A stretch of 64,000 nucleotides of DNA, taken from positions 164,424,001-164,488,000 of the forward strand of contig JANJGN010000009.1 of assembly GCA_026770705.1 (NCBI GenBank), in the 5' to 3' direction. The translations under genes and the position numbers were made by a program. The DNA comes from Isurus oxyrinchus. Taxonomy: Eukaryota. Under the pieces are notes generated by a model, which did no database searches, had not been told where the DNA came from, and saw only the letters and a list, made by a program, of their open reading frames with translations. Below, one piece after another: positions 4,211 to 33,785 of this stretch. Each line of letters begins with the position of its first letter. Position 1 is the first letter of the stretch.

Positions 4211-4540
4211 GTTTATGTCAATTAATTGGACCCAAGAAGGTTCATGGAGAATTAGGAGGATTGGTCACTGTGAACTGTCAGTATGACCTGAAGTACAAGT
4301 ATCATGTTAAAAGATGGTGTAAAGGTAATTATTCCATCATTTATGGATGTTCTGCTGTGGTTTCTACTGAAAAACCAGAAAAAGGAAGAGTATCACTGGC
4401 TGATAACAAAACACAAGGAATATTTTCAGTAACCGTGGATCACCTAACGAAGAGTGATGAATGACAATACTGGTGTATGATAGAAACATCAATATTTAAA
4501 TTGGGTGAAAAGACTTCTATTGAATTAGAAGTTTCGGAAG
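4211..4540 (+). pseudogene. Gene A Ig V exon (disabled)
   Basis: Colinear with 22534-22863 (41 differences in 330 nt by hand count). Acceptor cag is changed to caa at 4208-4210, and GGA to TGA gives an in-frame stop at 4462-4464 just before QYWC. Confidence 0.92.
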
Positions 4541-4558
4541 GTAAGATAACGTATGTCC

Positions 4559-5092
4559 GGGCAGAATTTTCACTTCAGCATGCAGGGGCGGGACCAGCAC
4601 GCCGATGCATAAAATGACGCGCAGTGATGTCGGGCGTGCATCCTGATGTCACTGCGTGTCATTCCAATCTTCCGTTCGGTGATAAGGCCATTAATAAACC
4701 AATTGAACTAATTGACAGGGACGCCCGGAACGTTAAGGTTGGCCGGCAGGCGAAGAGCCCAAGTGGCCTTCAGGTTCTTCGTGAAACCTCATCCATGGGG
4801 GTGAAATGAGGTTTCATGAAGGTTTTATTAAACTAATAAAGATTTTTTACACATTTCATAAACATGCCCCATCTCATCTAACACTGTCCCATGAGGGTAC
4901 ATGTCTAAATAATTTCAATGGTTCTTTACTTTAAAGTTTCAAATTGAACTTAATCTCCCTGAAGCAGCGCCGTGCCTCTGGGAGATTTCTGCGCTCTTTC
5001 ATGGCGCACAGCGGATCACGGGCGGTGATAGGCTCCATGCCCATCCGAGCCCACTCCCAACCAGCCCGCCTGACAGGCAGAAGACTCTACCC
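4559..5092. mobile_element. Harbinger-type MITE
   Basis: Ends GGGCAGAATTTT and AAGACTCTACCC (9/12 inverted match) with 3-bp flanks tcc/tct. Host sequence on both sides is colinear with uninterrupted 22864-22935. A related copy lies at ~48488-48960. Confidence 0.75.
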
Positions 5093-5299
5093 TCTACATA
5101 GTCTATTCTACTCAGGTTTAAACACTGAAACCAGAAGTACGCCGGCTCTGATTGTGACGCGGTACCAAATACTGGGGTTATCGCAGGGGTGGACATCCAT
5201 TTACTGGGGTGTCAACACTGGATTTCCAAAGCAAGATCTTTTCACTCCTTCAGGAAGAGGGAAGAGAAACCGACTGGGAGAACATGTCCCTGCTGAGAG

Positions 5300-6380
5300 A
5301 ATTTAACTAGCAGTTGTTGTGTTTGCAGCCAGAAATTTCTCAAGGGCCGTTTAGCTGAGAAGTAATGGGGGGGAGTTTTAACAGTTAATGGAGGTGGACT
5401 TGAGTGCACGTGGGGAGTTAAATCCCCCAAAAAGCCACGGAAAGTAGGGATCTTGACATCATTCTCCGCACTTCCATGTTTCACCCGGGCAGGTTTGATA
5501 GTGAATGGGAAACCCTTGTGCAGCTGTCAAAGGTGCTATTTAAATATTGAAGTAGGCAGTTAAGTTCTGGTTTCATCAAGGATTCTGGTTTAAACTGACA
5601 GTGGACCACATTCTCAAGCTGTGTGGAGATCACTAGTATCACTGAGGCAAGTGCACAATGCTTCTTCAGTGAAACTGACAGGCTGAGAAGTCTTTAACTA
5701 TGAAAATCAAGAGCTCCACCCTCTCAGAGTGCTGTCACTGCTTATCAAGTGATTGTTGACTTCTGAGAAGTCACTTCACTGGTCGAACTCTTCACTCACC
5801 TCCAACCTTCATTATGGCATGAGGGCAGCTTATGCAGCTCTAACTTCCACCCCTGATGAGGAGCAGGAGAGGCAACAATGCCAGCAATGGCACCAGGAGC
5901 TATGGCAGGAGCAACATTCTCAGCAGCACCAGCTGCCTTTTCACCCACAAGGCAATGGGGATGGGCACAGAGTTCCAACCCCAAGGAGATGAGAACCCAA
6001 CACAGAGCCTACAGGCAGGGAATCAGCTCTCTTGACATGTGTGAGTACCAGTGTCTCAGGAGGTTCAGGCTATCATGGTATTGTTGTTGCTGACGTCTGC
6101 AGCCTCCTGGAACAAGACCTCATTCACAGCGACCCTGAGGTGGGTCATATTGTCTGAGGCCATCAATGGGGTTGTCACTGGAAGACAAACTCTTTCCTCT
6201 CAACCACAACCCATCAACTCCCCTCCCCCCACCCTACCCCACCCAGACCTCTATCTCTCCCTGAGGTTCTGTGCTCCTATCTCCGGCAAGGCAAGAAAGT
6301 ACAGATTTGAGAGTTAGAAATGGCTTGTGTGAATAAGAACAAAGGACAACAGTTGTGAAGGGTGACTGTGTGCCACAATT
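5300..6380 (+). mobile_element. Non-autonomous Harbinger remnant (transposase 5' portion)
   Basis: RTQHRAYRQGISSLDMCEYQCLRRFRLS resembles the transposase N-terminus at ~20700-20800; homologous to 11845-13130. Confidence 0.55.
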
Positions 6381-6567
6381 TAACCCTGCTAATTCATTCT
6401 AGCTTCTCCCCTTTAAAATAGAAATGATCAATTGAAATAAGTGACTCCAAAAGCAAAAAGGGGGAATTTTTCATTTCGAAAAATGATTTAAGAGACACAA
6501 TTAAGAGAGTAGAGAGTACACAGGAGTTGCTTTTCACAATAATGTTCAACAGTTTCCTCTATTATAG

Positions 6568-6671
6568 GCCACAATAGAGTTGAACAATAGGCCCAACTGC
6601 CAGAAGAACAGGAAATACTGAGGCATTTTTTTTACACTGCTCACCACTTCTCCTGTCAGAGCCATTCACAC
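6568..6671 (+). pseudogene. Gene A stalk exon remnant
   Basis: Aligns with 24253-24358 (GGCCCAAC..CAGGAAATACT..CTCACCACTTCT). Carries an indel, TAG/TGA stops, and the donor gtaagt is changed to ataaat. Confidence 0.75.
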
Positions 6672-7119
6672 ATAAATCCTTGTCAAGGTGAAAAATATAC
6701 TTGGTTCTTTAATACATGTAAGTGAGGAATGATAGCTCACAGAACATTTTTCCAGGCTAACTTATGAGATTAAGGTTAACTACATTACAATGCTTCACTG
6801 TTCTAAGGGGCGCTGAGGTAGTCAGTTCAAAGTACAGCCAGTCTAATTTCTTCTGGCCAGGTCACTTTTTTAGTCAAGCCAGATTTCAAGGACTCTTGAA
6901 AGATGCCTTCCAATGTTCCCCATTTACGAAATAGTTAACTAAATAAAGACAGCAGCATTATATCCTGGCCATTGTTTTGGTCAAGACTTTACCATGAGTG
7001 CTAACACTTCTGTTAAGGTAGAAGGATCTTTGTTAGTTATAACAAAACTGAAACTTTCTGGCTGGTGGACTGATGCTTCTATTAAAATTAGTCATTTTGA
7101 AATGTAAAACATTACTTTT

Positions 7120-8302: not shown

Positions 8303-8407
8303 AGAAGATGAGCTGAAGAGTTACAGTTTATGGGCTGCACTCCGTTGGCCGTTCTTTGGTGCTCTGGTTGTTTGTACTCTCTCGGTCACATTTTGCAAAA
8401 GACCCAG
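8303..8407 (+). pseudogene. Gene A transmembrane exon with intramembrane Arg (activating-type)
   Basis: ttgtttaatcag|A..CCCAG|gtataa; starts in phase 2 like the gene B and C TM exons; EDELKSYSLWAALRWPFFGALVVCTLSVTFCKRP, open frame. Confidence 0.7.
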
Positions 8408-10805
8408 GTATAATATTTTAAAACTTCCGATTCTAATATTCAAAATGATTTCATTCAGTTGAAAAGTTCAAGCACAACGAAAATTTGCCTAAAAAAAAAT
8501 GGTAAATAATCCAAGAGAAAATACCCGCCGCTCATAAACTCCTCGCGAGAGAAGCATTGTCCCATTCCAATGTTACAACAACGGCTTTTGGGGTAAATTT
8601 TGTGCTTATCAACTGCAGTTTGTGTGGTTTCAAATGGAAATCCAAGAAAGGAATCCTCGCATGCAACTGTTATTGACTGATTGCAGAACATAACTGCCTG
8701 GAGTCAAGGGTTGAATTTTATGGCCCCCGGAAAGTGAAAGGGAGGTGAGGGTCCGGTAAGATCCTGGAGACCAGGGTCAGGTCGAATCCCCATTGCAATC
8801 TCACCATCAGGGCAATTTACTGACCTTGGGAGTGGAAGTAGGCAAGTTACCTGCCCCACAGAGGCAGGCAGCCAGTTTACATACGCAAAGGCCCCTATTA
8901 AGGTCCATTGAATTGTGCAATCTTTGCTGACAATGGGGCTACTCCCCAACACTTGGGAGGCCGCCAGCTAAATGGAGTTAGCCTTCCACTGACAGCCCAG
9001 GTGAGGGGGAGGGGGGGTCTGGTATAGGCAGCAAAGAGAGGGTCATAGGGAAGGCAGCCCCTGGGGCCCTAGGAACCCTCCTGGAGGGATTTTCCCTCTA
9101 GCATGCCACTCTTTGATTAGCTTTTCTTGTCCTAATGCTGTAGACCTCACACCTCCTTCCTGCCTCAGCTGTGAACAACACTCCCGGTGGCACTTCAGAG
9201 CTGCTGGCTCTCTGGCTGAGTCTACAGCTCCTGCAGGCAGGCGGCTGGTCATCTATAATAGGATGACAGCCCCGAAGCAAAGTTCAGGTAGAAGTCCCGC
9301 TGCACACCCATGCCTGCTGGTGACTAGCATTTCCTCCCACTGTTGGGACCTTCTCGCTGATGGTAAAAACCTGCCTTATGTGATTGCTTGACCCAGTTAT
9401 CAGACAGGGGAGTGAAGCATGAGGCCGTGTGTGGCAAAAGACAATCTAGTAATCTGTCTTTTAATTGTCACCGGAATATTTGTGTTAACGGTCCACCTTT
9501 GATGCTCGTGCTTTTAACTGTTACACCTTAACTTTAGAATTCCCTCCCTAAAACTCTCCACCTCTCTCTCTCTCTCTCTGTTCTCCTTTAACACAGTCCT
9601 TAAAGGCTACCTCTTTGCTCAACTTTTGTTCACCTGTCCAGATATCTCCTTGTGTGGTTTCAGTGTTCTTGCTCACCAATTTCAAATCTACAGTGTTTAT
9701 CACCTATTCCCAAAGACAATTTCCAAGTTCTAATGAGGATGGCATCTTGTAACAATATGCTAATACCTAAATTAATAAACTTTGATAATTGTAATTAGAG
9801 AAAAGTGCAGTACAAATATTGATGTAGATATTTTGTTATGGACAGAATTAATGTTTTCCCTTTACTGCCTGTGATCGGTATGCATTGTATGAAAGTGGTA
9901 TGTGTTCTCACTCGCTCATTTCACACACACCCGTACATGCACAAAGATTAGATACAAATGATGGTAATATACTGTTACAGCTGGTAATTATCTCAGTCTC
10001 TTTCAAGGCAGGCCTGTGTTTCTTAGAAGAAGTCAATGGTTAAGATGAAATGAAGATCTTTTAAAGCAAAGGCTTTCTTTAACAGGCTGTGTGGTTTCTT
10101 GTGGTTGAATCCCTAGAAGATTTGGCAGGGCTCCTTCTCCCTGTTATTAAGATCTCACACTCTCAAGGTATTGCTGGTTATTACCTCGGCTGCATGGATG
10201 ACTTGCTGTTACTTCGATGGCTTTCTGATGAAACTCTGGCTGCAAGAAATCTCTGCTGATTTAGAAGCGGACTACCAAAATAGTTCCTGCATGATGTGAC
10301 TTCCACAAGTTCAAAGTCAAACTGCTTTTTTGCAAACAAAGGAAGATGGGTCTGTTGATTCCAATCTTCCTGGGTTGTCTTTTGACACCATGAGATTCAA
10401 TCAGCCCGCTTTGGATGAGGGACACCATCAAAAGATACTGGAATCTCGGTAGGATCCACTCGCGTTTGTCACACAAACGTTGAGTTTCAATACCCCCTTT
10501 TGTCCAGAATGAAATAGGGAGTCAGGTCAGCTGGAGTTCTATAGTCCTTCTGTGTCGATTTATCATTAAACAAAGGGAGGTGTGAATACCCTGAATGTGT
10601 GATTCTGTGTGAATGTCCATATCTAATTAGGTATTTACTTGAGACTCAGGGCCGTCTGCGGCTCATCATGTCAAAGGTCAAATGAATTGCAGCGGCTATT
10701 TTAATAGAGCGCGTGTGTCCAATTCTTAAAAGTTTTCGCTGACAGTTCATAATATACTGGAACATGACATTACACTTCATCTGTGGGAACAACAAGGAAA
10801 ATTTC

Positions 10806-10912
10806 CATCAAGTTCTGTCGAAGGGTCATGAGGACTCGAAACGTCAACTCTTTTCTTCTCCGCCGATGCTGCCAGACCTGCTGAGTTTTTCCAGGTAATT
10901 CTGTTTTTGTTT
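10806..10912 (+). repeat. Short PLE pLTR unit, 11-bp TSD
   Basis: Near-identical to 38571-38680. AGGAAAATTTC at 10795-10805 and 10913-10923. Confidence 0.8.
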
Positions 10913-11844
10913 AGGAAAATTTCTGGTTTTGTGAAACTGTGCCCGACCATCTCGGGCTTTTCCATCAATTAATTTCTGTGGTGCCCTACAAGGGGCAGAA
11001 TCTCTGCCAATCACACCCGAGGCCTAGAAATGGGCAGGAAGTTCAAAAGCACCAAAGAGGGAACTGGTCTAACATCAGACCACTAACTAGGATAACAAGC
11101 CTTGTGGTATAGGCTTAGACTGATTTTCTTATCTAAAATGAGTGCCATGTTCAAAGGCAGACCTGCAATTGGGGATGGGAGGGGGCACCAACACTGCTCC
11201 TGGATCAAGCACAGTGTGTTGCATTGTACAGCCCGGCACCCAAGATGTGCCCCAATGCCATGGGTACCACATGCAAAACCTAACCCCAGGAAAGTTGAAC
11301 AATATCAGAATAAGAGGTTACGCTATGCGAATCTTGCCACTTAGTCCAGGATATCCGCTCCCACCCTCTCACCTGCACATTTTTGGCCAGTATCTCTGAA
11401 AGTGAAACACCTTTGAAAGAAGGTCAACTCATTCATTTTTTACAGTTCAATTGCTTAAATTTATTCCTTATTCAGTTATCCAGGCCAGCAAATGATGGGT
11501 TAGATGGAAACATCAGCTACAAGATGCCAATGGATCAGAAGTCCAGTCAAAGGCTGGACAGAAGATTGGCTAAATCCTCCATGAGTATCCAGAATATTTT
11601 CACTTGCTTTTAGAAGTTAATTTTGCATATTGTATTTTATATCTTATTACAATTTGAAATGCTTTGTAAAGTTCCCAGAAATTGTGTGAACCACTTAAGA
11701 TGATAAACTTTGTTGATATTATATTAAGGAGCATTTTTTTCTGCAACGGACACAGATGGTTCACAAAAATAATTGACCCCTTGTAACCAGCAGTAACTAG
11801 TTAAAAAAATGTCATGTTAGTATTTTGAAAAATAAGAAAGTAAT

Positions 11845-17312: not shown

Positions 17313-17352
17313 ATGGAATTAATTACTCTCTTGATTCTAATGCCTGCATCAA
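17313..17352 (+). CDS. Gene B exon 1, signal peptide
   Basis: Strong Kozak gaaccATGG; [13 protein letters not shown] plus A|gtaagt donor, phase 1, matching the Ig exon. Same 40-nt size as the gene C leader. Confidence 0.8.
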
Positions 17353-20300: not shown

Positions 20301-23300
20301 AACCTGCATCCTATGGTCACACATTATCTGCACGTTCATGGAGTGGAAGCCCTTCCTGTTGACAAAGGCACCGGGCTCACCGCTGGCGCCTTGATGCCCA
20401 CATGTGTACAGTCTATAGCACCCTGGACACGGGGGAACCCAGTAATCGCTGCAAAACCTCTGGCTCGCTCAGCCTGGCTGGCCTCGTCCATATAGTAAAG
20501 AATAAATGTCGGTACCCGCCTGAACAGAGCTTCAGTCACCAGCTTGATACAGCTGTGGACAGCTGATTGGGAGACTCCACACAGATCCCCCACTGACCCC
20601 TGGAAAGAGCCAGAGGCATAGAAGTTGAGGGCCACTGTGACCTTCAGAACCACTGGCATGGGGTGTCCACCTGAACAATTGGAGTTGATCTCAGGGCCGA
20701 TCATCTGACAAATGGAGGTCACTGTCTCCCTTGAGAGACGAAGCCTCCTTCGGCATTGCACCTCGGGCATATTGAGGTAGATGCATCGCCGCCTGTAAAC
20801 CCTGGCAGCAGGATAGTGGCATCTTCTGTGGCCCATTCCGCCTTGGACAACCCGCTGGCCATGCGTCCCTTGTGCCTGCGCCTCTCCTCCCACAGGTCCC
20901 TCCCCTGGAGGCTGCATTGGGACACTTGGCCTCCTCTCCCTTCAGCCCCTCTCTTCCTCTTCAGAGGAGGGGCCTCCAGCAGAGACCACAATCCCCAAAG
21001 CCAGGGCAAGGGAAGGCTGTCTGATACCTGGAAGGGTCCACACGGTCTGAATCCTCCGGAGTGCTGGAAGACAGCACTGTGTCCTGAAATGAGGCCTGGA
21101 AATGCTAAGAAAAAGCCTCAAACAGAGATGAAGCTATCAAGTTCAGAGAAACACACAGCTGCAAACTGCCTCCAAAACTGCTCACTACTCACACTGGAAA
21201 TGCTGCTGACGCTTTTTATGCCGTCCTTGGATGAGGTTTGAGGAAATGTCGGCTGGCCGCCTGCCTGTTTTGTCTTGCGATGAGCAGAAAATCGGACGGG
21301 CAACATAACATCACAGACCATTGGACTGTTCAGGGCCTGAAGTAACTTGTTACTTAATGGCGGCCGCCGCTCCGAAACCCGCGCATGCCCAGTGAGCGAG
21401 TAATCTCAAGAGTGCACGATGACGTCGGGACACTTGCTCACCATCATCGCACACTATTTTACTCTCGTTCGAGGCGGGTGCGCACCCACCCCAAGAGGGA
21501 ATCGTTCTGCCCCTGGTGTTCCTGTAAAGCGGGTGCTCACTGCCTGGCTCTGCCCATTTTCTGGTTCCTGTTGGAGAACAGCTCGGGTAGTTTGACAGCT
21601 CAATTATTGATTAGGCTAAATATTGGTACAGTGTCTATTTAAACACGATACTGTGTTGGATATCATGCCCACACTGAAATTATGCCCCTTTACTTAGTGC
21701 CCAATACATGCAAAGAACGCATGAATTATACTTGTAGGAGCAACTTTGCAAGGTACTTTGAGGTCAGCGATCTGCAAAATGTACACTAACTGAATATTAT
21801 TTCTAACAGACAGTATATTGCCCTTAGTTCTTAACAGTCACCTACAGAGAAGTGTTGGCAACAGCCTCAAATCAGGTCAACTGCCCGTCCTCTTTAACTA
21901 GGGAAATTGTAAAGGGACAGTTAATAGGACAGGAAAAATCTAATGAGACTGCAATTTTCACCAGAGACATCTGTTATATCAGTGAAAAGCAGCGGCTGGA
22001 TTTTTATTTCCCGCGCTGAGTAAACCCATGTTGGGTGGAGCATGCAGGGCCGCAGTTTTATACCTGCCTGTCCGTTCCCACCACCTGTAATTTCCCATGC
22101 TCTGAGAAATGGGCAGACTGAGAAAACCTGTAAGAAGGAATGAAGGAATTAGTTTCATTTTCAAGTTTCTTGTTGAGTATTTTCAATACAATCCATGTAA
22201 ATAAGGAAAATAAATCAATAATGACATCAGGAATTTTATCTGAATGCTCTGGTTTTGGAAAATCTGGCCCCACAAACAGCTCACAGCAGGAAACCAGAGG
22301 CCTGCATCTCGGGGAAACTGGTTACAAAAGCTGTGTATACACAGTGATTTGTGTAACCGTGTTGGTGGAATGAGACTCAGTGTGAGCAATCTGATATTAA
22401 AAAGTGGAATCGGATCTGTTATGGCACAGGAGATTGTCATAACAATGGAATAGAAGTGTTTGTTTAGTTGAATATTGTTTTCGTTGATCCTGGTAGAGTT
22501 ATTAATAATCTTTCATTATTAATATCCCAACAGGTTTGCAACATTTAATTGGACCCAAGAAGGTTCATGGAGCATTAGGAGGATCGGTCACTGTGAAGTG
22601 TCAGTATGACCTGGAGTACAAGGACCATGTTAAACAATGGTGTAAAGGCAGTTATTCCATCTTAACTGGATGTTCTGTTGTGGTTTCTACTGAAAAACCA
22701 AAAAGAGCAAGAGTATCACTGGCTGATAACAAAACACAAGGGATATTTTCAGTAACCATGGATCACCTAATTAAGAGTGATGAAGGACAATACTGGTGTG
22801 TGATAGTAAGACCAGGAATTAAATTTAATGAAAAGGTTTCTATTGAATTAGAAGTTTCTGAAGGTAAGAGGACAAACGCATTTCTATTTAGTTTATTCTA
22901 CTCAAATTTAAACATTGAATTCAGAAATACTCACTGATCCAATCAGAGGACCAGCAGCTCAACAGCCTTGGCAGTGTCATCAAGAGCTGTGGCTACTGCT
23001 GATGCAACAGGAGGAACAAGGGATTGACCCCAAGCTGATGCACCATCAAAGCCAAAGATGTTTTTACCAAGCTGGGGTCAAGTAGGTAGGCCTCACCAAT
23101 CGGGAGAATGCACAGTCCATCAGGGACACTCTAGCCTTGGAGCTGATTGTTCCTGCTGGTGGGCCCCTCCATGAGCCTTGGGAAGCTATACAGGGGGTGG
23201 GGGTTTCCCCTCCCAGGGAACCCACTGGGAAAGCAATCAGGCCTCATCTGGCAGTCTCCACATCAACTGCTCCCAATATCAGGAAAATGCTGACGGGGGC

Positions 23301-26300
23301 AGAACGTGGTCCTTAATTGGACAATTAATTGGTTAAATTGCAGGGAGACGGTAGCCTTGATGGAATCTCACTGGACTAGTAATTCAAAGGCCCAGGATAT
23401 TGCCCTGGAGACATGGGCTCAAATTGCACCATGGCAGCTGGTGGAATTTGAATTCAACTAATAAACTAATAAAGCTAGTCTCAGGAATGATTACCATGAC
23501 AACTATGATCAATTATTGTAAAAAAAATGCCATCTAGTTCACTAATGTCCTTTAGGGAAGGCAATTTGACATCCTTACCCTGTCTGGCCTACATGTGACT
23601 CCAAACCCACAACAAAGTGGTTGACTCTTAACTATTTCCTACATTGGCCTAGCAAGTCACTCAACTCAAGGGAATTTAAGGCTGGTTAACAAAAACTGAC
23701 CTTGCCAGCGACACCCATAACCCATGAAAATTTTTTTTAAATCCACCGACTGGAGATGGAAGGCATGTTGCTGAGATTTCTGCCACTGGCAATAACTTGT
23801 GGCAGCAGGAAAACACTGGACTCCCTTCCTGTCACCGTCCACTGCCATTTTCCAAGTCCTCCTGCCTCCCAGTCCCTCTCCAGTGGGCCAGTAAAACTCA
23901 GCCCATTCTTATCATGTCACTTTCCCAATGCCAGTCGATCGATTGGAAATCAAAACACCTGCAAGCTTACACAGGGAGGAAACCCAGCACTATATATGCA
24001 TCTAGTCATGTGTTTTGTTGTAGTTACCTCTGATTTCACCCTTTTATCCCAGTCCTACAAATTCAGCCAACACCTGCCCAAAAACCATTGAATAACCTGA
24101 TCATTTGAATTAAGCAACACAAACATTACAAAGAGGGAATTTAGTGTGGGAAAATGATTATTAAATAATTAACATGACTCAATTCAGAGGAGTACACTAT
24201 ATACAGAGAGCACTTTTAATAATAAAATGTTCAACCACTCCCTCTCTTATAGGTCCACTATGGAGTTCAACACAAGGCCCAACCACTAGCAAAGCAGGAA
24301 ATACTAAAACTTTTGTTACTACAGCTCTCACCACTTCTTCCTCCAGTGTCTCTCCTGAGTAAGTCCTGTTAAAACCAAACTCAGTGTATTTGTTGCCATA
24401 GTGTGTGTACATAAGGAATGATAGACCACAGAACTATTTTAGAGAAAAACCCATTGGGCTGACCGCAATGTGGAGCTTCATTATTCAATCAATGATAGTT
24501 GTCATGGTCACCATTACTGAGACTAGCTTTATATTCCAGATTTATTAATTCATTTCAAATTCCACCAGCTGCTGTGATGAGGTTTGAAACCATGTCTCCT
24601 GGGCAACATCCTGGGCCTCTAGATTACTAGTCAACACTGGCAGTGAAGTTGGTCCCTCAAAGATCAAAACCAATGTTGTGTAAGTTTACCAACAGGGAAA
24701 AAGTATTCTGCAAATAGCTCACTTTTAAATTCCAAATGAAGGCACCGCACAATATACAAATTCATTGCCTGTGGTAATCTTTGGTGAAACTTAAAATAGA
24801 TCCTGTTTTTTTTTTGGCTTTGGCACTAAAACAGGTTTCACAAATTTCTGATCACCCGCCCTTTTTTTTTAAGGTGATTAACTAAATAAAACCAATTGCA
24901 TTACATTTTTCACTTTTCTGCTGCTCAATGCCATGTTAAGACGTCCTACATATATTCTCTATAGAACTTCCATGTGATAATCTATCTCTTCTGGCATGGT
25001 CCAAGAGCAATTATTGCACAGCACACCAAAAGTGGTTTTGATAAATCCACATCTTCAGCATTTAATCTTCCCCTGGAGCCTCAGCAGTGAATGGGGATAT
25101 TGGAAAACAAGAGTTGGCCTGTGTAAAATCAATCCCACTCACTTACAGCAGCATGGTCTTTAGGTGTGATTGATATCAGAATTACCCATTCCTCTCCATT
25201 CTGAATGGGAATAGTGTGGTCACTATGTGCAGACAAGAGTAACAGCATTCTGCAAGAAGTCCTGAGGCTGCAAGACAAACTTTTATTCAAAAAGTCAAAA
25301 ATAAAACTGAGCTTGACCAAGTCAGCAGACAGAAAACACCTAAACATCATGTCATGGTGGTACGATATGACAGCTGGTATGTGCCAGGCTGACAAAATCC
25401 CAGAGGGAAACTTAGCCACGCTATCACAATGATCTTGCAACTTGTATTTATTACCAGAAGGTTTGTGACCTGAAGTCAGAAGTAACGAGTCCACTATCAC
25501 TTTTTAGAAATTTTAAAGATTAAATTAAAACATTTATGAACAAAAGAAAGAAAACTTAAACACACAAGTTTTCCGTTACACAGTTACGTTTAGTTTTATA
25601 ACAGTTCCCACAAGATATATATTTAACTACACTCCCAACTACACACCCCTTTCAGGCAACAATCCAAAATAGATTATTAAACTGTGAAACATCTAGCAAA
25701 ATTACCACAATTATGCACCATTCTTTGCAGCTGCTAGAGATTACAATGCAAGGTCCATGGGGGAGGGTGGGTGCATAAATTCATGACCTTCTAACCCAGA
25801 GATGTTACCTACTGAGCCATGACATACACATAGACTATGGCCACCTTGAGCTCCAATTACTTAAATCCAGGATGTCAGTAGGTCAACAAGCAATTAAACC
25901 ATTTGTATTAAATTCCTATTTTAACAGAAACATTCATTTGCTTTTGAAAAACCTTTGCTAATACAGCTAGAAAAAGAATTTAGTAGGAACACATTTAAAT
26001 GTTCACACACTAATCCTGGCACAGTCTAATTCCAAGGGCATAGAGCTTCATTAAATGGTGGCAGAAAGACTGGTTGCTTATATTATACTTCGTTTAGAGC
26101 TACAGGTATAGCAACATTAAAATGTATTTCTTATTTGTACTTGATCAGATTGAAACAGAATGAACTTGGGAGAAATATGATGTAATTACACCAGCTCTGT
26201 CTATCTCACACTCCAAAAATCTTAATTTTTACAGTGAGAAACAGTGGCATGTGATTCTGCCAGCGATCATGGTGCTAATCATCCTACTGCTCGTTGCTGC

Positions 26301-29300
26301 TATCATTCTTTATGTGAAACTAAAACTGCAGAAGAAAAGAGGTACATTCTGTCCAAAGTAAAATGTAAAAGTCATGAGCAATCATTTTTTAAAATAGCTA
26401 TGAAAACAAATTAACATTTATTTAAGCAGCGCTTTTCAGAACCTCCGAATCTCCCTGAATCACATAACAGCCAGGTAAATATTTTGAATTGCAGTCACTG
26501 TTGTAATGTTGGAAATATTGCATCTAATTTGCACACAGCAAGATCCCACAAACAGCACCTGTCACCTGTTTGGTGATGTGAGTTGAGGGATAAATATTGG
26601 TACTGACACCAAGAAGATCTCCCCTGGACTTCTTTGAAAATAGTGGCATGGGATCTTTTGCACAGACAGGACCATAGTCTAATGGCTCGCGCAAAACATC
26701 AAGGTTTTTCAGCGTTTCCTGACCATTTCCTGCTTCCATATGTGCAAAGAGCTTTTAAACCACTGCTAGCACACGTAAAAAGACTCTTTTAAAGAATAGC
26801 AAACATCATCAGGTCAGGAACATACAACAGGAATTAAATTCAATGTATCTGATGTGCTTCTAACATTTGAATATTTTGCAGCACTCTCGGAATAAAAAGT
26901 CTTATGCAAAAACTGAGAAATTGCAAATCGGGCCAGGACAGGTTGTACCCTGACTCACCCTGAATGTTGAGTTGACAATTAATCTGGGATGTTGAGGAGC
27001 AGCTTCAAAACAGACTATCCATGAGGGAATGAAACTCAGAAATTTGAAACCCAGATAATTAACATTAACAGTAAAGATGCAAAGCTGAAGATTTGCTAAT
27101 AGGAATTAGAGTGAGCTTCCTAGGAGTAGTTCTAAGGCATAGAATCCAGAAGACTTGGGTCCTATCACTGCAGTCTTTGCTAAATTACCTGGGGCAGCAA
27201 TTGATGTGCTGCGATTGATCTCAGATATTGCAGGGAAAGTATATGTGAGGATGGCAGCAGACAACAGGTTTGTGCTTTACTCTGATGCCTTCAACAATTG
27301 GATCACTTTTTTTGATTTTATTCTTTCACGGAACATGGGTGTCGCTAGCTAGGCTAGCATTTTTGTTTCCCATTCCTAATTGCCCTTGAGAAGGTGGAGG
27401 TGAGCCATCTTCTTGAACTGCTGTCAACCATGAAGTGTAGATGCACCCAAAGTGCTGTTAGGGAGGGAGTTCCAGGATTTTGACCTAGTGACAGTGATGG
27501 AACGATGATGCAGTTCCAAGTCAGGATGGTGTGTGGCTTGGAGGACAACTTTCCAGGTGGTGGTGTTCCCATGCACCTGCTGACCTGTCCTTCTAGATAG
27601 TAGAGATCAAGCATTTGGAAGATGTTGTCAAAGGAACCTTTGTGAGTTGCTGCAGTGCATCTTGTAGATGGTACAAACTGCTGCTACTGTGCATCAGTGG
27701 TGGAGGGAATGGATGTTGGAGGTGGTGGATAAGGTGCCAATCAAGCTGGCTGCTTTGTCCTGAATGGTGTCGAGCTTCTTAAGTGTTGATGGAGCTGCAC
27801 ACATCCAAGCAAGTGGAGAGCATTCCATCACACTCCTGACTGGTGCCTTGCGTGTGGCGGACAACTTCTGGGGAGTCATAAGGTGAGTTACTCTGGGCAG
27901 AATTCCCAGCCTCTGACCTGCTCTTGTAGCCACAGTATTTATATGGCGCGTCCAGTTCAGTTTCTTATCAAAAATAACCCCCAGGATGTTTATAATGAGG
28001 GATTTAGCGATGGTAATGCCATTTAATGTCAAGGGAAGATGGTTGGATTCTCTTTCGTTGGAGATGGTCATTACCTGGCACTCATGTGGCATGAGTTTTA
28101 CTTGTCAATAATAATTTTGCAGGCTCGCCGTCCAGGAATGGGCAGTCGAGCAAGCTATCACGAGATAACTAGTAGCAATGGAGCTGAGGACCAGTGAAAG
28201 TCAACAGCTACACAGAGAAAAGGCAAGAAGGAAAGAGGAAATTAACAAAAGAAAAAGTCTAAAAGGAGAAGAAAAGATTGGAATATTCACAAATGAACAC
28301 AATCAAGCTATTTCCAATAATATTATACTCTTGGCTCCCAGCAGTGAGAAAACTATTTGTTTTAGATCATTTTAACTCAAAAAATTGCCTGGATTTTAGT
28401 CAGTAACAAAATGATGGCTCTCGCTGCTGACATTCAAGAATGCTGCCTACAAAGATTTAGCAATCTCTGTGACATGAATTTCATCTTTTCCTCTGTTAAT
28501 TTCATTCTGATACCAATTAGAGGGGATCTCCGGTAGCATCCGTCATATTATCGAGCAGGCGAAGCAGCCAGTCAAATTGAACAAAAACAAAAATACCTGG
28601 AAAAACTCAGCAGGTCTGACAGCATCTGTGGAGAGGGACACAGTTGACGTTTCGAGTCCGTATGACCCTTCATCAGAACTAAGGAAATAGAGAAATGGGG
28701 TGAAATATAAGCTGGTGGAGGGGGTGGGACAGGTAGAGCTCGACAGGGAGCCAGTGATAGGTGAAGGCAAAGAAGAGATTGCCAAAGATGTCATAGGCAA
28801 AAGGACAAAGGGGGATTGATGGTGGTGACATTATCTAAGGAATGTGTTAATGGGGACATTAAGGGTAGTGAGCAGGACAAGCTAGTGGCAGATGGCCCTA
28901 GTGGGGGTGGGGTGCGGGGAAGGGGGGAAGGGATCGAAATGGGCTAAAAGGTGGGGATAAAACAATAGATCGAAATAAATTTAAAAATAGGTGGGAAAAG
29001 AAAAATATATTTGTTAAAAAATTCTAAATTATTGGAAAAAGGAGGATTGGAAAGGGGGTGGGAATGGGGGATAGAGTTCATGATCTGAAATTGTTGAACT
29101 CAATGTTAAGTCTGGAAGGCTGTAAAGTGCCTAGTCAGAAGATGAGGTGCTGTTCCTCCAGTTTGTGTTGAGCTTCACTGGAACATTGCAGCAAGCCAAG
29201 GACAGACATGTGGGCATGAGAGCAGGGTGGAGTGTTGAAATGGCAAGCAACAGGGAGGTCTGGATCATGCTTGCAGACAGACCGAAGGTGTTCTGCAAAG

Positions 29301-32300
29301 CGGTCACCCAGTCTGCGTTTGGTCTCTCCAATGTAGAGGAAACCACATTGGGAGCAGCTAATGCAGTAGACTAAATTGAGGGAAGTGCAAGTGAAATGCT
29401 GCTTCACTTGAAAGGAGTGTTTGGGCCCTTGGACGGTGAGGAGAGGGGAAGTAAAGGGGCAGGTGTTGCACCTTCTGCGGTTGCATGGGAAGGTGCCGTG
29501 GGAGGGGATGAGGTGTAGGGGGTGATGGAGGAGTGGACTAGGGTGTCCTGGAGGGAACAATCCCTGTGGAAAGCCGCCAGAAAGGATGAAGGGAAGATGT
29601 GTTTGGTGGTGGCATCGTGCTGGAGTTGGCGGAAATGGGGGAGGATGATCCTTGGAACGCAAAGGCTGGTGGGGTGATAAGTGAGGACAAGATTGAAGCT
29701 TTCTCACAGACAGGTTTTATCATTCAATTTTTATAATTTTACAGAAAGCAAAATAAACATACACGTTAAATTAATGTAGGAGTTGAAGTATCAAAAAGAA
29801 ACTTTTAAAAATATTTTAACATGAAAAGGAGATATTTGACATTCCACAAATATAAAATAGTGTTTTTCAGGGCTAGAGAGACTAATCAACAATAAATATA
29901 ACTAAGTATGCTATTAGAATCCCAGGTACAACTCATTTAACAAGGCATACATTTTTCAAGGGTTTTTCTGGTAAGACTATTAGAGTGAAATGTGGAAGCT
30001 CATGTCAAATTTCTAATTGATTTCTATCTGTTTACACTTCAAGAGCACACTCTGTAGACGAGCAGGGTATTACTGACAGCAACTTCTGGATTTATGCTCT
30101 GCATGTGCGGGTAGCAGAAAATGCCATCAGTTTCATCGAGTTATGATGACAGATGCTGACGGAGCCATCGTTGTTACAACTGAAAAATAAAGGCTGATGT
30201 AAAGAGTTAAAGTCATGATGCCTGGGTATATATTGGATTGCCTAGATGCAGTGCAAAGAGGAGGGTTGGGTAGGAAGCCTCATGGGCACAGAAATCTGTT
30301 CCCAATCCTCTTCTAGGCTGCAACTTTCATGTGATCCAAAATATGCAATCTCAGGAATGGGGAAGTCTGCCCCTTTGTGCCGTTCCAGGGCACTTTGAGG
30401 TTTTGCAAGAGGTTTAGTACTGTCTTACAGTGGATTACTTTATGAATCAAGTACTTTAGAAACCAATGGATTCTGTAATCCAATGGAACCTCCTGAGGAG
30501 GTGACAAGGAAACAAATGTAAATCCAAGGTTATTCTGCCTTTCAGAAGAATAAAACCTCTGCAGAGCAAATGGTAAATTGGCTTTATGAAGTTATACATA
30601 AAACACATATCAAATATCGGTTAAATAAATAAAACCCATCAGGAACCTTTGCAAAAATAAAAGTAAAATACTGCGGATGCTGGAAATCTGAAACAAAATC
30701 AGAAAATGTTGGAAAAATGCATCTGTGGAGAGAGAAAAACAAAGTTAATATTTTGAATCCGTACGAGCTTCTTCAGAGAAGAGGAAATGTGATGAAATTT
30801 AAAACAAAAACAGAATTACCTGGAAAAACTCAGCAGGTCTGGCAGCATCGGCGGAGAAGAAAAGAGTTGACGTTTCGAGTCTTCATGACTCTTCGACAGT
30901 TCTGTCGAAGGGTCATGAAGACTCAAAATGTCAACTCTTTTCTTCTCCGCCGATGCTGCCAGATCTGCTGAGTTTTTCCAGGTAATTCTGTTTTTGTTTT
31001 GGATTTCCAGCATCCGCAGTTTCCTTTGTTTTTATCTCTGTGATGAAATTTATACTGTTTAAGGGGGCGTGGGGCAGGTGGAGCTGGATAGAAGGCCAGC
31101 GATAGGTAGGGACAATGGAGAGACTGACAAAGATGTCACAAACTAAAGGGCAAAAGGATTGTTAATGGCAGTGGTTTGTGCTAAAAAAACAGGTGCTATA
31201 GTGGCATAAAGGTAAGAAAGCAGAATGTGATTATAGCAGAACAAGGATAGCATTGTGTGAAAGAACAACATGGAACAAGCATGGAAACGCTTTGTGGAAC
31301 ACCTGCGGTCTGTCCGCAAGCATGACCCAGACCTCCCTGTCGCTTGCCATTTCAACACTCCACCCTGCTCTCATGCCCACATGTCCGTCCTTGGCTTGCT
31401 ACAATGTTCCAGTGAAGCCCAACGCAAACTGGAGGAACAGCACCTCATCTTCCGACTAGGCACTTTACAGCATTCTGGACTGAATATTGAGTTTAATAAC
31501 TTCAGACCATGAACCCCCTCCTCCATCCCCACCCCCTTTCCGATCCCCTTTCTTCTTCATTCATTTATATTTTTTACCCATTTGTCTTATTTTTATTCAT
31601 TTATCCATAGTTTTATCCCCTTTTTTATCCCATTTTCTATACTTTTTTTCACTCCCCCACCACCACCCCCTCCCCTCACCTCATCCCCTACAGGGCCATC
31701 TGAACCTTGTTTTATGTTGTTCTTTCCCGCAATGCTATCATCACATTCTGCTTTCTTTATGCCACTACTAGTACAATTTTTTTTAGCACTAACCACTACC
31801 ATTAACAATCCCTTTGTCCTTTAGTTCATGACATCTTTGTCTGTCTCTCCTTTGTCCCTACCTATCGCTGGCCTTCTATCCAGCTCCACCTGCCCCACGC
31901 CCCCTTAAACAGTATAAATTTCATCACATTTCCTCTTCTCCAGCTCTGAAGAAGGGTCATACGGACTCAAAACATGTTTGAGCTCAATAACGTGCTTACT
32001 ATAAAATGATGTTTTGTATAACTTTATTTTACAGGCATGAATGAACAGAATTTTACTGGCATGGAAAATCCTGCAGGAGCCTGCAAGGTGAGACGATGTC
32101 ACATCAGAGTCACATGGTTGCAGCAGACCCAAGGAGACCATTGTCAACTCTGGTTGGATACATCCTGGAATGACATTCTGACCACATGACACTTGATCAT
32201 GTGACTGACTGACTTATGTTCAGTCACATGACAAATGCAAATGTTAATGTGTTTGCTCATAAAGGTTGGGTCACCTGTAGTTGCCTGTGGGTTTGAACCT

Positions 32301-33785
32301 GCAACTGTTGTGCAAGAAGTTCTGAGAACCAGGAGGTCGCTCATGACCAGGAGGAGAGGGGAAACATAGGGCAGGGAAGAATAGAAATCAAGGATAATGG
32401 AGTGATTTACAGAGGGTAAAACAGGTGGGAGGAACTTTTACTCCACCATTAACCAGAAATGACTCACTGGAATTGGCTGGTAACTAATAGTAATACTGGG
32501 AACACTCAGATACCCCTAGTAAGTGAAAGCAATAAAATAACTCACTGATAGTACTTTTCATTCCTTCACAGGATATGGGCATCGTTGGCTAGGCCAGCAT
32601 TTATTGCCCAGACCTACCACCTTCCTGAACCACTGCTGTCCATGTAGCGTAGGTACACCCAAGTGCTGTTAGGAAGGGTGTTCCAGGATATTGACCCAGC
32701 GACAGTGAAGGAATGGCAATATAGTTCCAAATCAGGATGGTGTGTGATTTGGAGGGGACCTTGCAAGTGGTGGTGTTCTCCTCTAGGTGGTAGAGGTTGT
32801 GGGTTGGGAAGATGCTGTGGAAGGAGGCTTGGTGAGTTGCTGCAGTGCATTGTGTAGATGGTACACACTGCTGCCCCTGTGTGTCAGTGGTGGAGGGAGT
32901 GAATGTTTAAGGTGGTGGATGGGGTGCCAATCAAGCAGGCTGCTTTTATTCTACCTGATTGAGTATGTGGCAGGAAGGCTTGTGGATGACCTTCCTGCCC
33001 CACCACCAACAGAAGCCCTTCTAAGAGCCTTACCCTGCTATCCAGCAGCAATTGGGATGATTGCCATGCAGGGAGTGTGAGGAGAAACCTATACAGTGTT
33101 GCTTGTGGGCTCTAACACAGGTGGTGCCCTTGTTCAAAGACGCTCAGTGCTTGATCAAGAAAACCAGCATCGGGGACCAGATGACAGCCACCCGCCTACT
33201 CTTTCTGCTGACTACCCTCCCCTGCGATGCCCCCCACCCCCTACCCTCCTGACACCCATCTCCCGTCACCCCTCACCCATATACTGGGATACAGCGATGA
33301 TACTCGGCCTTGGGTGGATGTCTTAGCGGCAGCAGCCACCATCTCCACAGTGCGCTGCCATTCAATTAAACTGCCAGCCTCTGATTGGCTGGCAGCTCTC
33401 GGCATGTGGCCTCTTCCGCCCCTGGGGTCCTTGATCCCAGGAAAGGCCTTCCACTGCCAGTTAAGTGCCTGATTGACACTTAATACAGCAGGCTTTCCCT
33501 AAAAGCCACATGCAGGACTCTCACTGGGCCTCCAGCCGACTGGCCAGATCCCCTTCGCCTCCGTTACACTTGCTGTGAGTTTGCGTTATTGTGGTAACAG
33601 TTTTCCAATTGTCTCAGTTTTCTAAGGAAGATGAAGAGGTGACATACTCCACGGTGAAGACAGCACCCAGAGCTAACTTGGAAAAAACTTACTATAATCT
33701 TCAGGATCTTAAAGCTGAAAGAACAGCCGAAGGCCAAGATGCTTCGGAAACTGTAGAATATTCCAGAGTTTATTTCAAATCATAA
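17313..33785 (+). CDS. Gene B: CD300/CMRF35-like (pIgR/MDIR-family) single Ig-V inhibitory receptor, 267 aa; join(17313..17352,22534..22863,24253..24358,26235..26341,32035..32087,33618..33785)
   Basis: All six exons are bounded by GT/AG with consistent phases (1,1,2,1,0) and total 804 nt, open to a TAA stop. Domains: leader [13 protein letters not shown]; V domain with [20 protein letters not shown] (extra C-C' disulfide typical of CD300/pIgR); S/T stalk; TM; tail with VTYSTV, TYYNL and VEYSRV. Confidence 0.88.
17875..20000 (+). pseudogene. Harbinger Myb/SANT-like DNA-binding gene (spliced, degenerate)
   Basis: [43 protein letters not shown] (donor 18149|gtgagg); second exon from 18780 [17 protein letters not shown] with the TGGG motif. 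Frameshift near 17940. Confidence 0.75.
20000..20917 (-). pseudogene. Harbinger (HARBI1-like, DDE_Tnp_4) transposase, frameshifted and 3' truncated
   Basis: ORFs 20336..20917 and 20043..20339: [14 protein letters not shown], (NRKGFHS)[50 protein letters not shown] 1-nt frameshift lies near 20381. Confidence 0.9.
22534..22863 (+). CDS. Gene B exon 2, Ig V-set domain (CD300/pIgR-like)
   Basis: aacag|GT..GAAG|gtaag, 330 nt, within ORF 22536..22937: [47 protein letters not shown]. Confidence 0.95.
23345..23740 (+). mobile_element. tRNA-derived SINE, same family as 54505-54880
   Basis: cactggactagtaattcaaaggcccagg..catctagttcactaatgtcctttagggaagg..; an antisense fragment lies at 24480-24635. Confidence 0.68.
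24253..24358 (+). CDS. Gene B exon 3, Ser/Thr-rich (mucin-like) stalk
   Basis: ttatag|GT..CCTGA|gtaagt, phase 1 to 2; [35 protein letters not shown]. Confidence 0.85.
26235..26341 (+). CDS. Gene B exon 4, transmembrane (uncharged)
   Basis: ttttacag|T..AGAG|gtacat, phase 2 to 1; [35 protein letters not shown]. Not in the ORF track. Confidence 0.88.
26410..26665 (-). mobile_element. Deu-domain (AmnSINE/SacSINE-like) SINE fragment
   Basis: cagtcactgttgtaatg..aatttgcacacagcaagatcccacaaacagca..gagggataaatattgg..gcatgggatctttt. Related fragments at ~34560-35180 and ~60555-60650. The family name is from recall. Confidence 0.5.
27320..28105 (-). mobile_element. L2/CR1-clade LINE 3' fragment, same family
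   Basis: ORF 27694..28092: [45 protein letters not shown]. Confidence 0.82.
28582..29690 (-). mobile_element. Penelope-like element 3' part (GIY-YIG endonuclease plus pseudo-LTR)
   Basis: ORF 29135..29707: [63 protein letters not shown]. Confidence 0.9.
28642..28680 (-). ncRNA. Minimal type I hammerhead ribozyme motif in a PLE pLTR
   Basis: Minus strand reads AGUU-CUGAUGA-A-GGGUC-AUACG-GACUC-GAAA-CGUC-AACU: canonical core, 5-bp stem II, palindromic ACGU stem III, GUC cleavage triplet and AGUU/AACU stem I. Confidence 0.75.
30660..31975. mobile_element. Penelope-like element in inverted (fold-back) arrangement
   Basis: The + strand GIY-YIG C-terminus ([40 protein letters not shown], 31286-31512) lies between inverted arms ~30760-31280 and ~31700-31975. 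Confidence 0.8.
30801..31038. repeat. Short palindromic PLE pLTR unit inserted in the older PLE, 13-bp TSD
   Basis: Near-perfect ~100-bp inverted arms centred at ~30900. TSD TGTGATGAAATTT at 30788-30800 and 31039-31051. Confidence 0.85.
32035..32087 (+). CDS. Gene B exon 5, short cytoplasmic exon
   Basis: tttattttacag|GC..AAG|gtgaga, phase 1 to 0; [18 protein letters not shown]. Shares ENP and terminal K with the equivalent gene C exon. Confidence 0.72.
32555..32945 (-). mobile_element. LINE 3' fragment, same family
   Basis: ggctaggccagcatttattgccca..ttccaggat.ttgacccagcgacagtgaagg signature. Confidence 0.7.
33618..33785 (+). CDS. Gene B exon 6, ITIM-bearing cytoplasmic tail
   Basis: gtctcag|TTT, phase 0; [55 protein letters not shown]. 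Homologous to 57222-57401. Confidence 0.88.
   Translation, partial: FSKEDEEVTYSTVKTAPRANLEKTYYNLQDLKAERTAEGQDASETVEYSRVYFKS

What the first reader, a model, noticed from the sequence alone, without database searches (positions are those of the whole stretch)
4211..33785. Paired activating/inhibitory Ig receptors: near-identical ectodomain, opposite signalling ends
Seen: genes A and B share an ~88% identical Ig-V exon and a homologous stalk exon, but their TM exons are unrelated. B has an uncharged TM and an ITIM tail. A has SLWAALRWPFFGALVVCTLSVTFCKR with an Arg near the extracellular end of the TM. Known: paired receptors (CD300, LILR/PIR, SIRP, skate MDIRs) have this layout, and an N-terminal TM Arg mediates FcR-gamma coupling in FcalphaRI, GPVI, OSCAR and LILRA, whereas mammalian activating CD300b/e use a Lys with DAP12. 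Inference: this is a shark CD300/pIgR-like paired receptor system whose activating members couple to an FcR-gamma/CD3zeta-type adaptor.
Basis: partly seen in the sequence, partly recalled or inferred. Interest (0 to 1): 0.85.

Follow-up and report, generated by a model that had tools for sequence, protein, structure and literature searches.

The report
Shark paired CD300-like receptors; activating copy decayed
Two neighbouring shark immune-receptor genes of the CD300/pIgR-like kind form an activating/inhibitory pair that is conserved across sharks, but in this genome the sensing part of the activating copy is broken, so this is an ordinary, already annotated kind of gene pair caught while one partner decays.

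Summary
Genes A and B share a V-set exon (87.5% nt, 75% aa identity) and a homologous stalk exon, and their membrane exons are unrelated. B is intact over six exons and ends in two ITIMs (VTYSTV, VEYSRV).

The Arg membrane exon of A (8303-8407) is a real exon. Contigs of three RNA-type runs stop exactly at 8303 and 8407. RefSeq models of catshark and horn shark join a CD300-like V domain to the same exon. The Arg is invariant in five species of four shark orders.

Gene A itself is disabled in this assembly:
- The V-exon acceptor is AA instead of AG (4209-4210).
- There is an in-frame TGA at 4462-4464. A relative about 3% divergent, consistent with white shark, has the intact base at both sites.
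- The stalk exon has a 1-bp deletion and stop codons.
- RNA-type runs of the window's own species cover the membrane exon but not the V exon.

Which exon is spliced in front of 8303 here stays unknown. The FcR-gamma/CD3-zeta claim cannot be read from sequence. The family is known (skate MDIRs, 'CMRF35-like molecule' annotations), and this scan has already noted MDIR-type clusters and Arg membrane cassettes elsewhere in this genome. Verdict: new member of a known kind, modest interest.

The parts
4211..4540 (+). Gene A V-set exon, disabled (pseudo-exon in this assembly)
   Evidence: Pfam V-set E 4e-9. 87.5% nt identity to the B V exon. The donor at 4540 is used in the relative's RNA-type contig (X2 record 11). 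No coverage in the window-species runs X1 and X3.
4209..4210 (+). Lost splice acceptor of the A V exon (AA; B has AG)
   Evidence: Sequence. The relative's DNA-type run X5 reads G at 4210, which restores AG (table 3). The next AG (4210-4211) would shift the frame by one base.
4462..4464 (+). In-frame TGA in the A V exon, at the Gly of the D-x-G-x-Y-x-C motif
   Evidence: Alignment to B, which has GGA. Runs X2 and X5 read G at 4462 (table 3).
4550..5090 (.). High-copy repeat inserted in the A intron just after the V donor
   Evidence: Homology to the B intron resumes at 5093-5140, matching 22883-22930. Word depth up to 55,781 in X5. Related copy at 48505-48947.
6568..6687 (+). Gene A stalk exon, degenerate. 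Only 6591-6687, from an internal AG, is open (phase 1 to phase 2).
   Evidence: 70% blastn match to the B stalk region. 1-bp deletion and stops. No RNA-type coverage in X1-X3.
8303..8407 (+). Arg-containing membrane exon: 105 nt, phase 2 at both ends, so it is a symmetric cassette
   Evidence: Contigs X1 record 7 and X2 record 16 lie exactly on 8303-8407 with unlaid letters on both sides. X3 record 24 ends at 8407 and continues 216 nt elsewhere. 97% identical to residues 213-246 of XP_041051254. 59% identical to the catshark exon.
8619..8676 (+). Alternative downstream exon used by the white shark RefSeq model. It ends in a stop here and has no spliced RNA support.
   Evidence: tblastn of P0003 residues 247-294 hits 8617-8760 with stops. 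Only an unspliced low-depth contig covers it.
11476..11503 (+). Likely last coding exon of the A-type transcript: (S)YPGQQMMG then stop, phase-2 acceptor ttattcag
   Evidence: Homologous to the catshark C-terminus SSPGQQMKG-stop and to the Mustelus model. It lies outside the laid stretch, as required by X3 record 24.
17313..17352 (+). Gene B leader exon ([13 protein letters not shown]), donor gtaagt, phase 1
   Evidence: tblastn with P0001, P0002 and P0003. Junction context.
22534..22863 (+). Gene B V-set exon, intact, four Cys (two disulfides), WCKG and YWC motifs
   Evidence: Pfam E 4e-15. PDB best single-domain match is CD300LF/CLM-1 at 69 bits; pIgR scores 135 bits over its five domains.
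24253..24358 (+). Gene B stalk exon, phase 1 to phase 2
26235..26341 (+). Gene B uncharged membrane exon ([22 protein letters not shown])
32035..32087 (+). Gene B cytoplasmic exon ([18 protein letters not shown])
   Evidence: tblastn with P0003. Junctions.
33618..33785 (+). Gene B last exon with two ITIMs (VTYSTV, VEYSRV), a YYNL motif and the stop
   Evidence: 93% identical to the white shark model tail.

Best explanation
The region holds two tandem members of the shark CD300/pIgR-like (MDIR-type) receptor cluster. They arose by duplication of the leader-V-stalk module in front of two different 3' modules.

Gene B is an intact inhibitory receptor with one V domain, a stalk, an uncharged membrane segment and a tail with two ITIMs. 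By analogy with CD300A/CD300LF, the ITIMs would recruit SHP/SHIP phosphatases once phosphorylated (inferred).

Gene A carries the activating-type 3' module. This is a 105-nt symmetric cassette exon encoding a membrane segment with an invariant Arg six residues in from the outer face, followed by a 9-residue terminal exon without signalling motifs. In intact orthologues this module is spliced to a V domain that is kept similar to that of the inhibitory partner. It would signal through an ITAM adaptor held by the Arg (inferred; which adaptor is unknown). Skipping the cassette keeps the frame and would give a soluble form (inferred).

In this genome the ectodomain exons of A are disabled by a lost acceptor, a nonsense codon and a broken stalk. 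The membrane exon is still transcribed and spliced. The activating partner is therefore a decaying gene or a null allele here, while it looks intact in a close relative.
For: - V-set domains and their identity.
- CD300/pIgR affinity of the V domain.
- B exon chain matches the second half of the white shark model colinearly, with canonical junctions and no stops.
- ITIMs.
- Exon 8303-8407 bounded exactly by RNA-type contigs in three runs.
- Intact V-stalk-Arg-membrane-short-tail proteins in catshark (P0002, P0006) and horn shark (P0008, P0009), with inhibitory partners P0007, P0010 and P0011.
- Arg and the W-x3-R-W ... C-[ST]-x-S-V-T pattern are invariant in five species.
- V domains of activating and inhibitory partners cluster within species (catshark 85%, white shark model 98%, Mustelus 89%; support 95-98).
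- Lesions in A. The relative reads the intact base at 4210 and 4462.
- Zero V-exon and stalk coverage against depth 57 on the membrane exon in X1.
- Phase bookkeeping for stalk to membrane exon to last exon, and for cassette skipping. The Mustelus model P0001 lacks the cassette.
Against: - The exon spliced in front of 8303 in the window's species was not seen. The flank letters of the contigs were not shown, and no second read-laying run was available. An intact upstream V and stalk from a neighbouring gene could feed this exon.
- All runs were contigs of guessed RNA type, and holes in contig coverage prove nothing.
- The lesions at 4210 and 4462 could not be checked in a DNA run of the same species, so a null allele or, less likely, two assembly errors cannot be excluded.
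- The white shark RefSeq model is a fusion of at least two genes and places a B-type V and stalk before the Arg exon.
- No functional or binding data exist for any of these proteins.
Confidence: 0.7

Rival explanations
1. Gene A is a working activating receptor in this species. The lesions are assembly errors or belong to one null haplotype, and the V exon was simply not sampled in the small RNA-type runs.
For: The membrane exon and last exon are intact, and the membrane exon is expressed at depth 57. The close relative has intact bases at both V-exon sites and expresses the V exon. Contig holes prove nothing (tool note).
Against: There are at least four independent lesions: AG to AA, TGA, a 1-bp deletion and stalk stops. 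That is unlikely as error. V-exon and stalk depth is zero in both window-species runs that do cover the membrane exon.
Confidence: 0.12
2. The Arg membrane exon at 8303 now serves another gene. An intact V and stalk from the neighbouring upstream CD300-like cluster splice across the dead A exons into it, or a V-less product is made.
For: The exon is spliced at both ends to sequence that does not lie in 3700-9600. V-less isoforms of an activating receptor are known for zebrafish Nitr9SS (PMC3463160).
Against: No joint was seen. Leader-to-membrane-exon splicing would be out of frame, since the leader donor is phase 1 and the membrane-exon acceptor is phase 2. The contig could also come from a near-identical paralogue, as X1 record 7 has 2 differences in 105 nt.
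Confidence: 0.18
3. The activating members couple specifically to an FcR-gamma/CD3-zeta-type adaptor, and not to DAP12 or DAP10.
For: The Arg lies at position 6 of a roughly 22-residue membrane segment, near the outer face. From my own knowledge, the same holds for mammalian FcR-gamma-coupled receptors such as Fc-alpha-RI, GPVI, OSCAR, LILRA and NKp46.
Against: The residue rule does not transfer to fish. The Lys-bearing IpLITR 2.6b binds FcR-gamma, FcR-gamma-L and CD3-zeta-L but not DAP12 (PMC4810170), and Nitr9 signals via Dap12 (PMC3463160).
Confidence: 0.4

Closest known systems
Mammalian CD300 (CMRF35-like molecule) family, e.g. CD300A/CD300LF (inhibitory) and CD300LB/CD300E/CD300C (activating)
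   Same: Both have a single V-set domain with two disulfides and a WC[KR] motif. The best single-domain PDB match is CD300LF at 69 bits. Both are type I proteins with a Ser/Thr-rich stalk. Members are tandemly clustered and carry either ITIM tails or a charged membrane segment with a short tail. NCBI names the shark proteins 'CMRF35-like molecule 1/3/5/8'.
   Different: The charged residue is an Arg near the outer face within a W-x3-R-W motif. It is not the central Lys of CD300LB/CD300E or the Glu of CD300C (my own knowledge). Orthology or synteny with the mammalian locus was not tested. The V domains of partners are homogenised within each shark species.
[quoted passage not shown] 2006, cited in PMC3031540)
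   Same: Both are large multigene families of activating/inhibitory IgSF receptors in a cartilaginous fish, with domains related to CD300, TREM, pIgR and FCAR (PMC3031540). Earlier notes of this scan file neighbouring clusters of this genome under MDIR.
   Different: I could not obtain skate MDIR sequences or the original paper, so direct similarity was not tested. From memory, the described MDIR domains are I/C2-like and vary from one to six, whereas A and B have a single V domain.
Classical paired receptors (KIR2DL/2DS, LILRB/LILRA, PIR-B/PIR-A, SIRP-alpha/beta, CD300A/C)
   Same: Neighbouring genes have similar ectodomains and opposite signalling ends. Ectodomains are homogenised between partners. 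The activating partner is evolutionarily short-lived (my own knowledge), and here it is decaying in one species while intact in a relative.
   Different: The A/B ectodomains here are only 75% identical. There is no evidence of a shared ligand.
Polymeric Ig receptor (pIgR) domains
   Same: The V domain aligns to all five human pIgR domains. The best are D4 and D5 at 36-37 bits each, 135 bits in total.
   Different: A and B have one domain, not two to five, and no secretory-component function is implied. The two-V neighbour gene C (44116-57398) is more pIgR-like in build.

Membership tests
CD300/pIgR-like V-domain receptors | V-set Ig domain with the canonical B-F disulfide plus a second C-C' disulfide, and WC[KR] / D-x-G-x-Y-x-C motifs | tested here: met
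   B has four Cys (VKC, WCKG, TGC, YWC) and the motif SDEGQYWC. Pfam V-set E 4e-15. A has the same layout but with TGA in place of the Gly codon.
CD300/pIgR-like V-domain receptors | Closest solved structures are CD300 members or pIgR domains rather than antigen-receptor or other V domains | tested here: met
   CD300LF/CLM-1 69 bits (E 3e-18). CLM-6 and CD300A 55-56 bits. pIgR 135 bits over five domains. NKp44 44 bits.
CD300/pIgR-like V-domain receptors | Orthology or conserved synteny with the mammalian CD300 locus | not tested
   No flanking marker genes were examined. The window holds only receptor genes and repeats.
Paired activating/inhibitory receptors | Neighbouring genes with closely related ectodomain exons | tested here: met
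   V exon 87.5% nt and 75% aa identity. The upstream intron is 82% identical and the stalk about 65%. The genes are in tandem on the same strand.
Paired activating/inhibitory receptors | Inhibitory partner: uncharged membrane segment and cytoplasmic ITIM(s) | tested here: met
   B has VTYSTV and VEYSRV in its last exon and an uncharged membrane exon. Phosphatase recruitment was not tested.
Paired activating/inhibitory receptors | Activating partner: an intact ectodomain joined to a membrane segment with a basic residue and a short motif-free tail | tested here: not met
   This is met in the catshark and horn shark orthologues. In this window the A V exon has a lost acceptor and a stop, and the stalk is broken. 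No V-exon RNA was seen in the window-species runs. The membrane exon and tail exon alone are intact.
Paired activating/inhibitory receptors | Association of the activating partner with an ITAM adaptor through the charged residue | not testable with these tools
FcR-gamma-coupled receptors (mammalian rule) | Arg in the outer third of the membrane segment | tested here: met
   The Arg is residue 6 of LWAALRWPFFGALVVCTLSVTF. Acidic EDELK lies outside and KRP inside. It is invariant in five species. The rule itself is unreliable outside mammals.
Skate MDIR family | Sequence relatedness to the described MDIR1-5 proteins | not tested
Only the description in PMC3031540 and this scan's earlier notes point there.

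The most novel reading that the evidence does not exclude
The 105-nt Arg cassette (W-x3-R-W ... C-[ST]-x-S-V-T) may be a single exon module that elasmobranchs have spread among several otherwise unrelated IgSF receptor families. These would include the CD300-like single-V receptors, the V+C2 receptors such as the Hemiscyllium protein P0004, and, according to earlier notes of this scan, Siglec-like receptors. The module would define one dedicated receptor-adaptor interface of sharks, whose partner need not follow the mammalian Arg/Lys rule. At this locus the cassette may outlive its own ectodomain and still be expressed, possibly as a V-less or cross-spliced product that competes for the adaptor.
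Probability: 0.2. Interest if true: 0.55.

Novelty: new member of a known kind. Interest (0 to 1): 0.35.

Why it matters
The finding shows that the paired-receptor layout is in place for CD300/pIgR-like genes in at least four shark orders. That layout is a homogenised sensing domain with opposite signalling ends. The membrane Arg is strictly conserved. This gives a concrete, intact candidate (catshark XP_038675621) for asking which ITAM adaptor the oldest jawed vertebrates use.

The locus also gives a clean example of an activating partner decaying in one species while intact in a relative about 3% divergent. That fits the view that activating partners are short-lived.

It does not reveal a new kind of system. 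The gene family is described in skates, automatic annotation already names these proteins, and the copy in this window is probably non-functional.

Tried and rejected
- **Second V-exon remnant at 5093-5140:** rejected. This stretch is the B-like intron just after the V donor, displaced by a repeat insertion.
- **Paralogue of the Arg exon in the window, or a remnant of it near B:** none found by tblastn.
- **Hydrophobicity plus AG/GT borders as evidence for the exon:** too weak. Sixteen such stop-free reading-frame/segment combinations, clustering at about six places, occur between 4541 and 17312. The case rests on RNA contigs and orthologues instead.
- **Protein fragments from run assemblies that would show the exon joined upstream of 8303:** the search with the open frame 8271-8459 found nothing (an earlier try with wrong coordinates failed).
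- **The 8619-8676 exon of the white shark model:** it has a stop here and no spliced RNA support.
- **Pfam on repeat-borne ORFs** (7153-7545, 15482-16429, 17913-18251, 20339-20941, 37850-38527): no family at E 0.001.
- **Literature:** no open paper on shark CD300-like paired receptors or on shark FcR-gamma/DAP12. Cannon et al. 2006 is not held.
- **Joined models:** All searches were exon by exon, by reference.
- **Complex prediction:** not attempted, for lack of a shark adaptor sequence.
Full report
**What is in the sequence**

The + strand of the window carries several Ig V-set exons.

The gene A V exon (4211-4540) and the gene B V exon (22534-22863) are both V-set domains, with Pfam E-values of 4e-9 and 4e-15. 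They align without gaps at 286/327 nt (87.5%), which is 82/109 aa (75%). dN/dS is 0.14/0.11.

Homology between A and B is uneven:
- It extends 340 nt into the upstream intron, at 82% identity.
- It resumes for 48 nt after a high-copy repeat that sits just behind the A donor (5093-5140 matches 22883-22930).
- It reappears at the stalk exon: 6425-6651 matches 24098-24338 at 70% by blastn, and the exon itself is about 65% identical.
- A further match (2-139 with 17639-17776) places the A leader about 320 nt before the window start.
- Downstream of the stalk the two genes share nothing. tblastn of either membrane peptide finds only itself.

**Gene B is intact**

I used the second half of the white shark RefSeq model XP_041051254 (P0003) as a guide, exon by exon. 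B has six exons with canonical junctions and consistent phases:

| Exon | Coordinates |
|---|---|
| Leader | 17313-17352 |
| V | 22534-22863 |
| Stalk | 24253-24358 |
| Membrane (uncharged) | 26235-26341 |
| Cytoplasmic | 32035-32087 |
| Last | 33618-33785 |

The V domain has the four Cys and the WCKG and YWC motifs of the CD300/pIgR type. Among solved structures the best single-domain match is CD300LF/CLM-1 at 69 bits. Human pIgR totals 135 bits over its five domains.

**The Arg membrane exon is real**

The exon spans 8303-8407. It is 105 nt long and in phase 2 at both ends, matching the phase-2 donors of both stalk exons.

I laid contigs of four public runs on 3700-9600:
- A 165-nt contig of X1 (depth 57) lies exactly on 8303-8407, with 30 unlaid letters on each side.
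- A 213-nt contig of X2 does the same.
- A 358-nt contig of X3 ends at 8407 and continues for 216 nt that lie nowhere in the stretch.

X1 and X3 differ from the window by about 0.4% in flanking intron, so I take them to be the window's own species. X2 and the DNA-type run X5 differ by 2-3.5% everywhere and read T at 8340 (Leu to Phe). This matches the WAAFRW of the white shark model, so they are consistent with that species (inference; run names are coded).

The downstream partner is most likely the exon at 11476-11503, which reads (S)YPGQQMMG followed by a stop. It has a phase-2 acceptor and is homologous to the catshark C-terminus SSPGQQMKG.

The 30-letter flanks on both sides of the X1 contig are what a de Bruijn assembler leaves when both neighbouring exons are also joined to something else. 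This fits cassette skipping. Skipping keeps the frame, and the Mustelus model P0001 shows it, with the stalk joined directly to SSPGQQVMG. This last point is inference.

**Orthologues join this exon to a CD300-like V domain**

- A search of 1.84 billion representatives with the 34-residue peptide returned XP_041051254 of Carcharodon carcharias (97% identity) and XP_060700983 of Hemiscyllium ocellatum. The latter is a V plus C2-type receptor with VWDVIRWVLFTLLVICSVSVT.
- Searches with the V exon and with the catshark protein returned Scyliorhinus canicula 'CMRF35-like molecule 3' (P0002 and P0006, 198-199 aa). These are built leader, V, stalk, EAELNSHRLWTLFRWLLFAALAVCTVSVTCWTRF, short tail.
- They also returned Heterodontus francisci P0008 and P0009, with RIWPIFRWLLVGALVICTVSVT.
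- The inhibitory partners are P0007, P0010 and P0011, which have uncharged membrane segments and ITIM tails.
- The Arg, both Trp, and the Cys and S-V-T of the segment are invariant in all five species, which represent four orders.
- On a V-domain tree the activating and inhibitory partners pair up within species: catshark 85% identity, the two white shark V domains 98%, Mustelus 89%, with support of 95-98. This is the signature of paired receptors whose sensing domains are kept alike.

**Gene A of this window is broken**

- The acceptor of its V exon is AA at 4209-4210, where B has AG. The next AG would shift the frame.
- Codon 4462-4464 is TGA, where B has GGA. This is the Gly of the D-x-G-x-Y-x-C motif.
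- At both sites the 3%-divergent relative reads G, in DNA-type and RNA-type contigs. Its V exon is expressed and spliced at the donor 4540.
- The A stalk exon has a 1-bp deletion at its start and stops in all frames of its first 23 nt. Only an internal AG at 6589-6590 would give an open phase-1-to-2 exon.
- In X1 and X3 the V exon and stalk have zero depth, while the membrane exon has depth 57 and 4.5.

Four independent lesions make assembly error unlikely. Still, no DNA run of the same species was available, and contig holes prove nothing. I therefore give 0.7 to the reading that this copy is a pseudogene or null allele with a membrane exon that is still transcribed.

What is spliced in front of 8303 in this species is unknown:
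- A protein-fragment search found nothing.

**The adaptor**

The Arg sits six residues into a roughly 22-residue segment. Acidic residues lie outside and Lys-Arg lie inside. In mammals this resembles FcR-gamma-coupled receptors (my own knowledge). The rule does not carry over to fish:
- Catfish IpLITR 2.6b has a membrane Lys yet binds FcR-gamma, FcR-gamma-L and CD3-zeta-L but not DAP12 (PMC4810170).
- Zebrafish Nitr9 signals through Dap12 (PMC3463160).
- The four short adaptors are thought to date from early jawed vertebrates (PMC4536121).

No shark adaptor sequence was at hand. I rate the FcR-gamma/CD3-zeta reading at 0.4 and regard it as untested.

**Comparison with what is known, and novelty**

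CD300/TREM/pIgR-like multigene families of activating and inhibitory receptors are described in the clearnose skate as MDIRs (stated in PMC3031540; the original paper is not held). NCBI's pipeline already names the shark proteins CMRF35-like molecules.

Earlier notes of this scan place this window at the end of a cluster of such genes nearly 1 Mb long. They also report the same kind of Arg cassette in Siglec-like and V+C2 receptors of this genome. These are leads only. I checked just the V+C2 case, through P0004.

No open paper on shark CD300-like pairs was found. The finding is a sound annotation of a new member of a known kind, with two modest points of interest:
- the strictly conserved cassette exon;
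- the species-specific decay of the activating partner.

All searches were by exon reference.

Noticed in passing
window 7157-7911 (copies at 27343-28107, 56488-57125, 32620-32945, 52254-52617 and others): A very high-copy interspersed repeat sits in the intron before the Arg exon. Summed word depth reaches millions in the DNA-type run and tens of thousands in the RNA-type runs. It swamped the joint and loose-end tables of the read-laying output.
   Followed up: partly
window 5472-6369 and 11961-13011: Two copies, 68-70% identical, of a segment of about 0.9 kb lie on either side of the A stalk and membrane exons. Depth in the relative's DNA-type run is about 5-10 times background, so this is probably a medium-copy repeat. 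Its open frames are Ala/Pro/Thr-rich.
   Followed up: no
window 14000-21500: A GC-rich block (0.51-0.58) with long open frames on both strands lies between gene A and the B V exon and spans the B leader. It looks like nested transposon remains (a reverse-transcriptase-like frame at 15482-16429), but Pfam gave no hit at E 0.001.
   Followed up: partly
window 57222-57398 (gene C last exon) versus 33618-33785: The two-V-domain neighbour gene C ends in a tail exon homologous to that of B (39% aa; VIYSTV, YANL, VEYSAL). The same inhibitory tail module therefore serves single-V and double-V receptors of the cluster.
   Followed up: partly
window 11640-11686: A stretch after the A-type stop codon is conserved with the read-through tail of the Mustelus model (YNLKCFVKFPEIV versus YTLKYFIKFPEIV). 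It may be a conserved 3' UTR element. No AATAAA or ATTAAA occurs within 1.1 kb after the stop.
   Followed up: no
protein P0003 (XP_041051254, Carcharodon carcharias): This RefSeq model fuses at least two genes, in this order: leader, first 38 residues of an A-type V exon (cut at a cryptic GTAAT donor), a B-type V, stalk, Arg membrane exon, a linker read through the next gene's 5' UTR, then the complete inhibitory gene. The model is likely mis-joined.
   Followed up: partly
window 10808-10916 (copies at 30895-31003, 37358-37466, 38568-38672, 45342-45449): A short repeat of about 105 nt has copies 93-99% identical in both orientations across the receptor introns. It looks like a young SINE-like element.
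   Followed up: no
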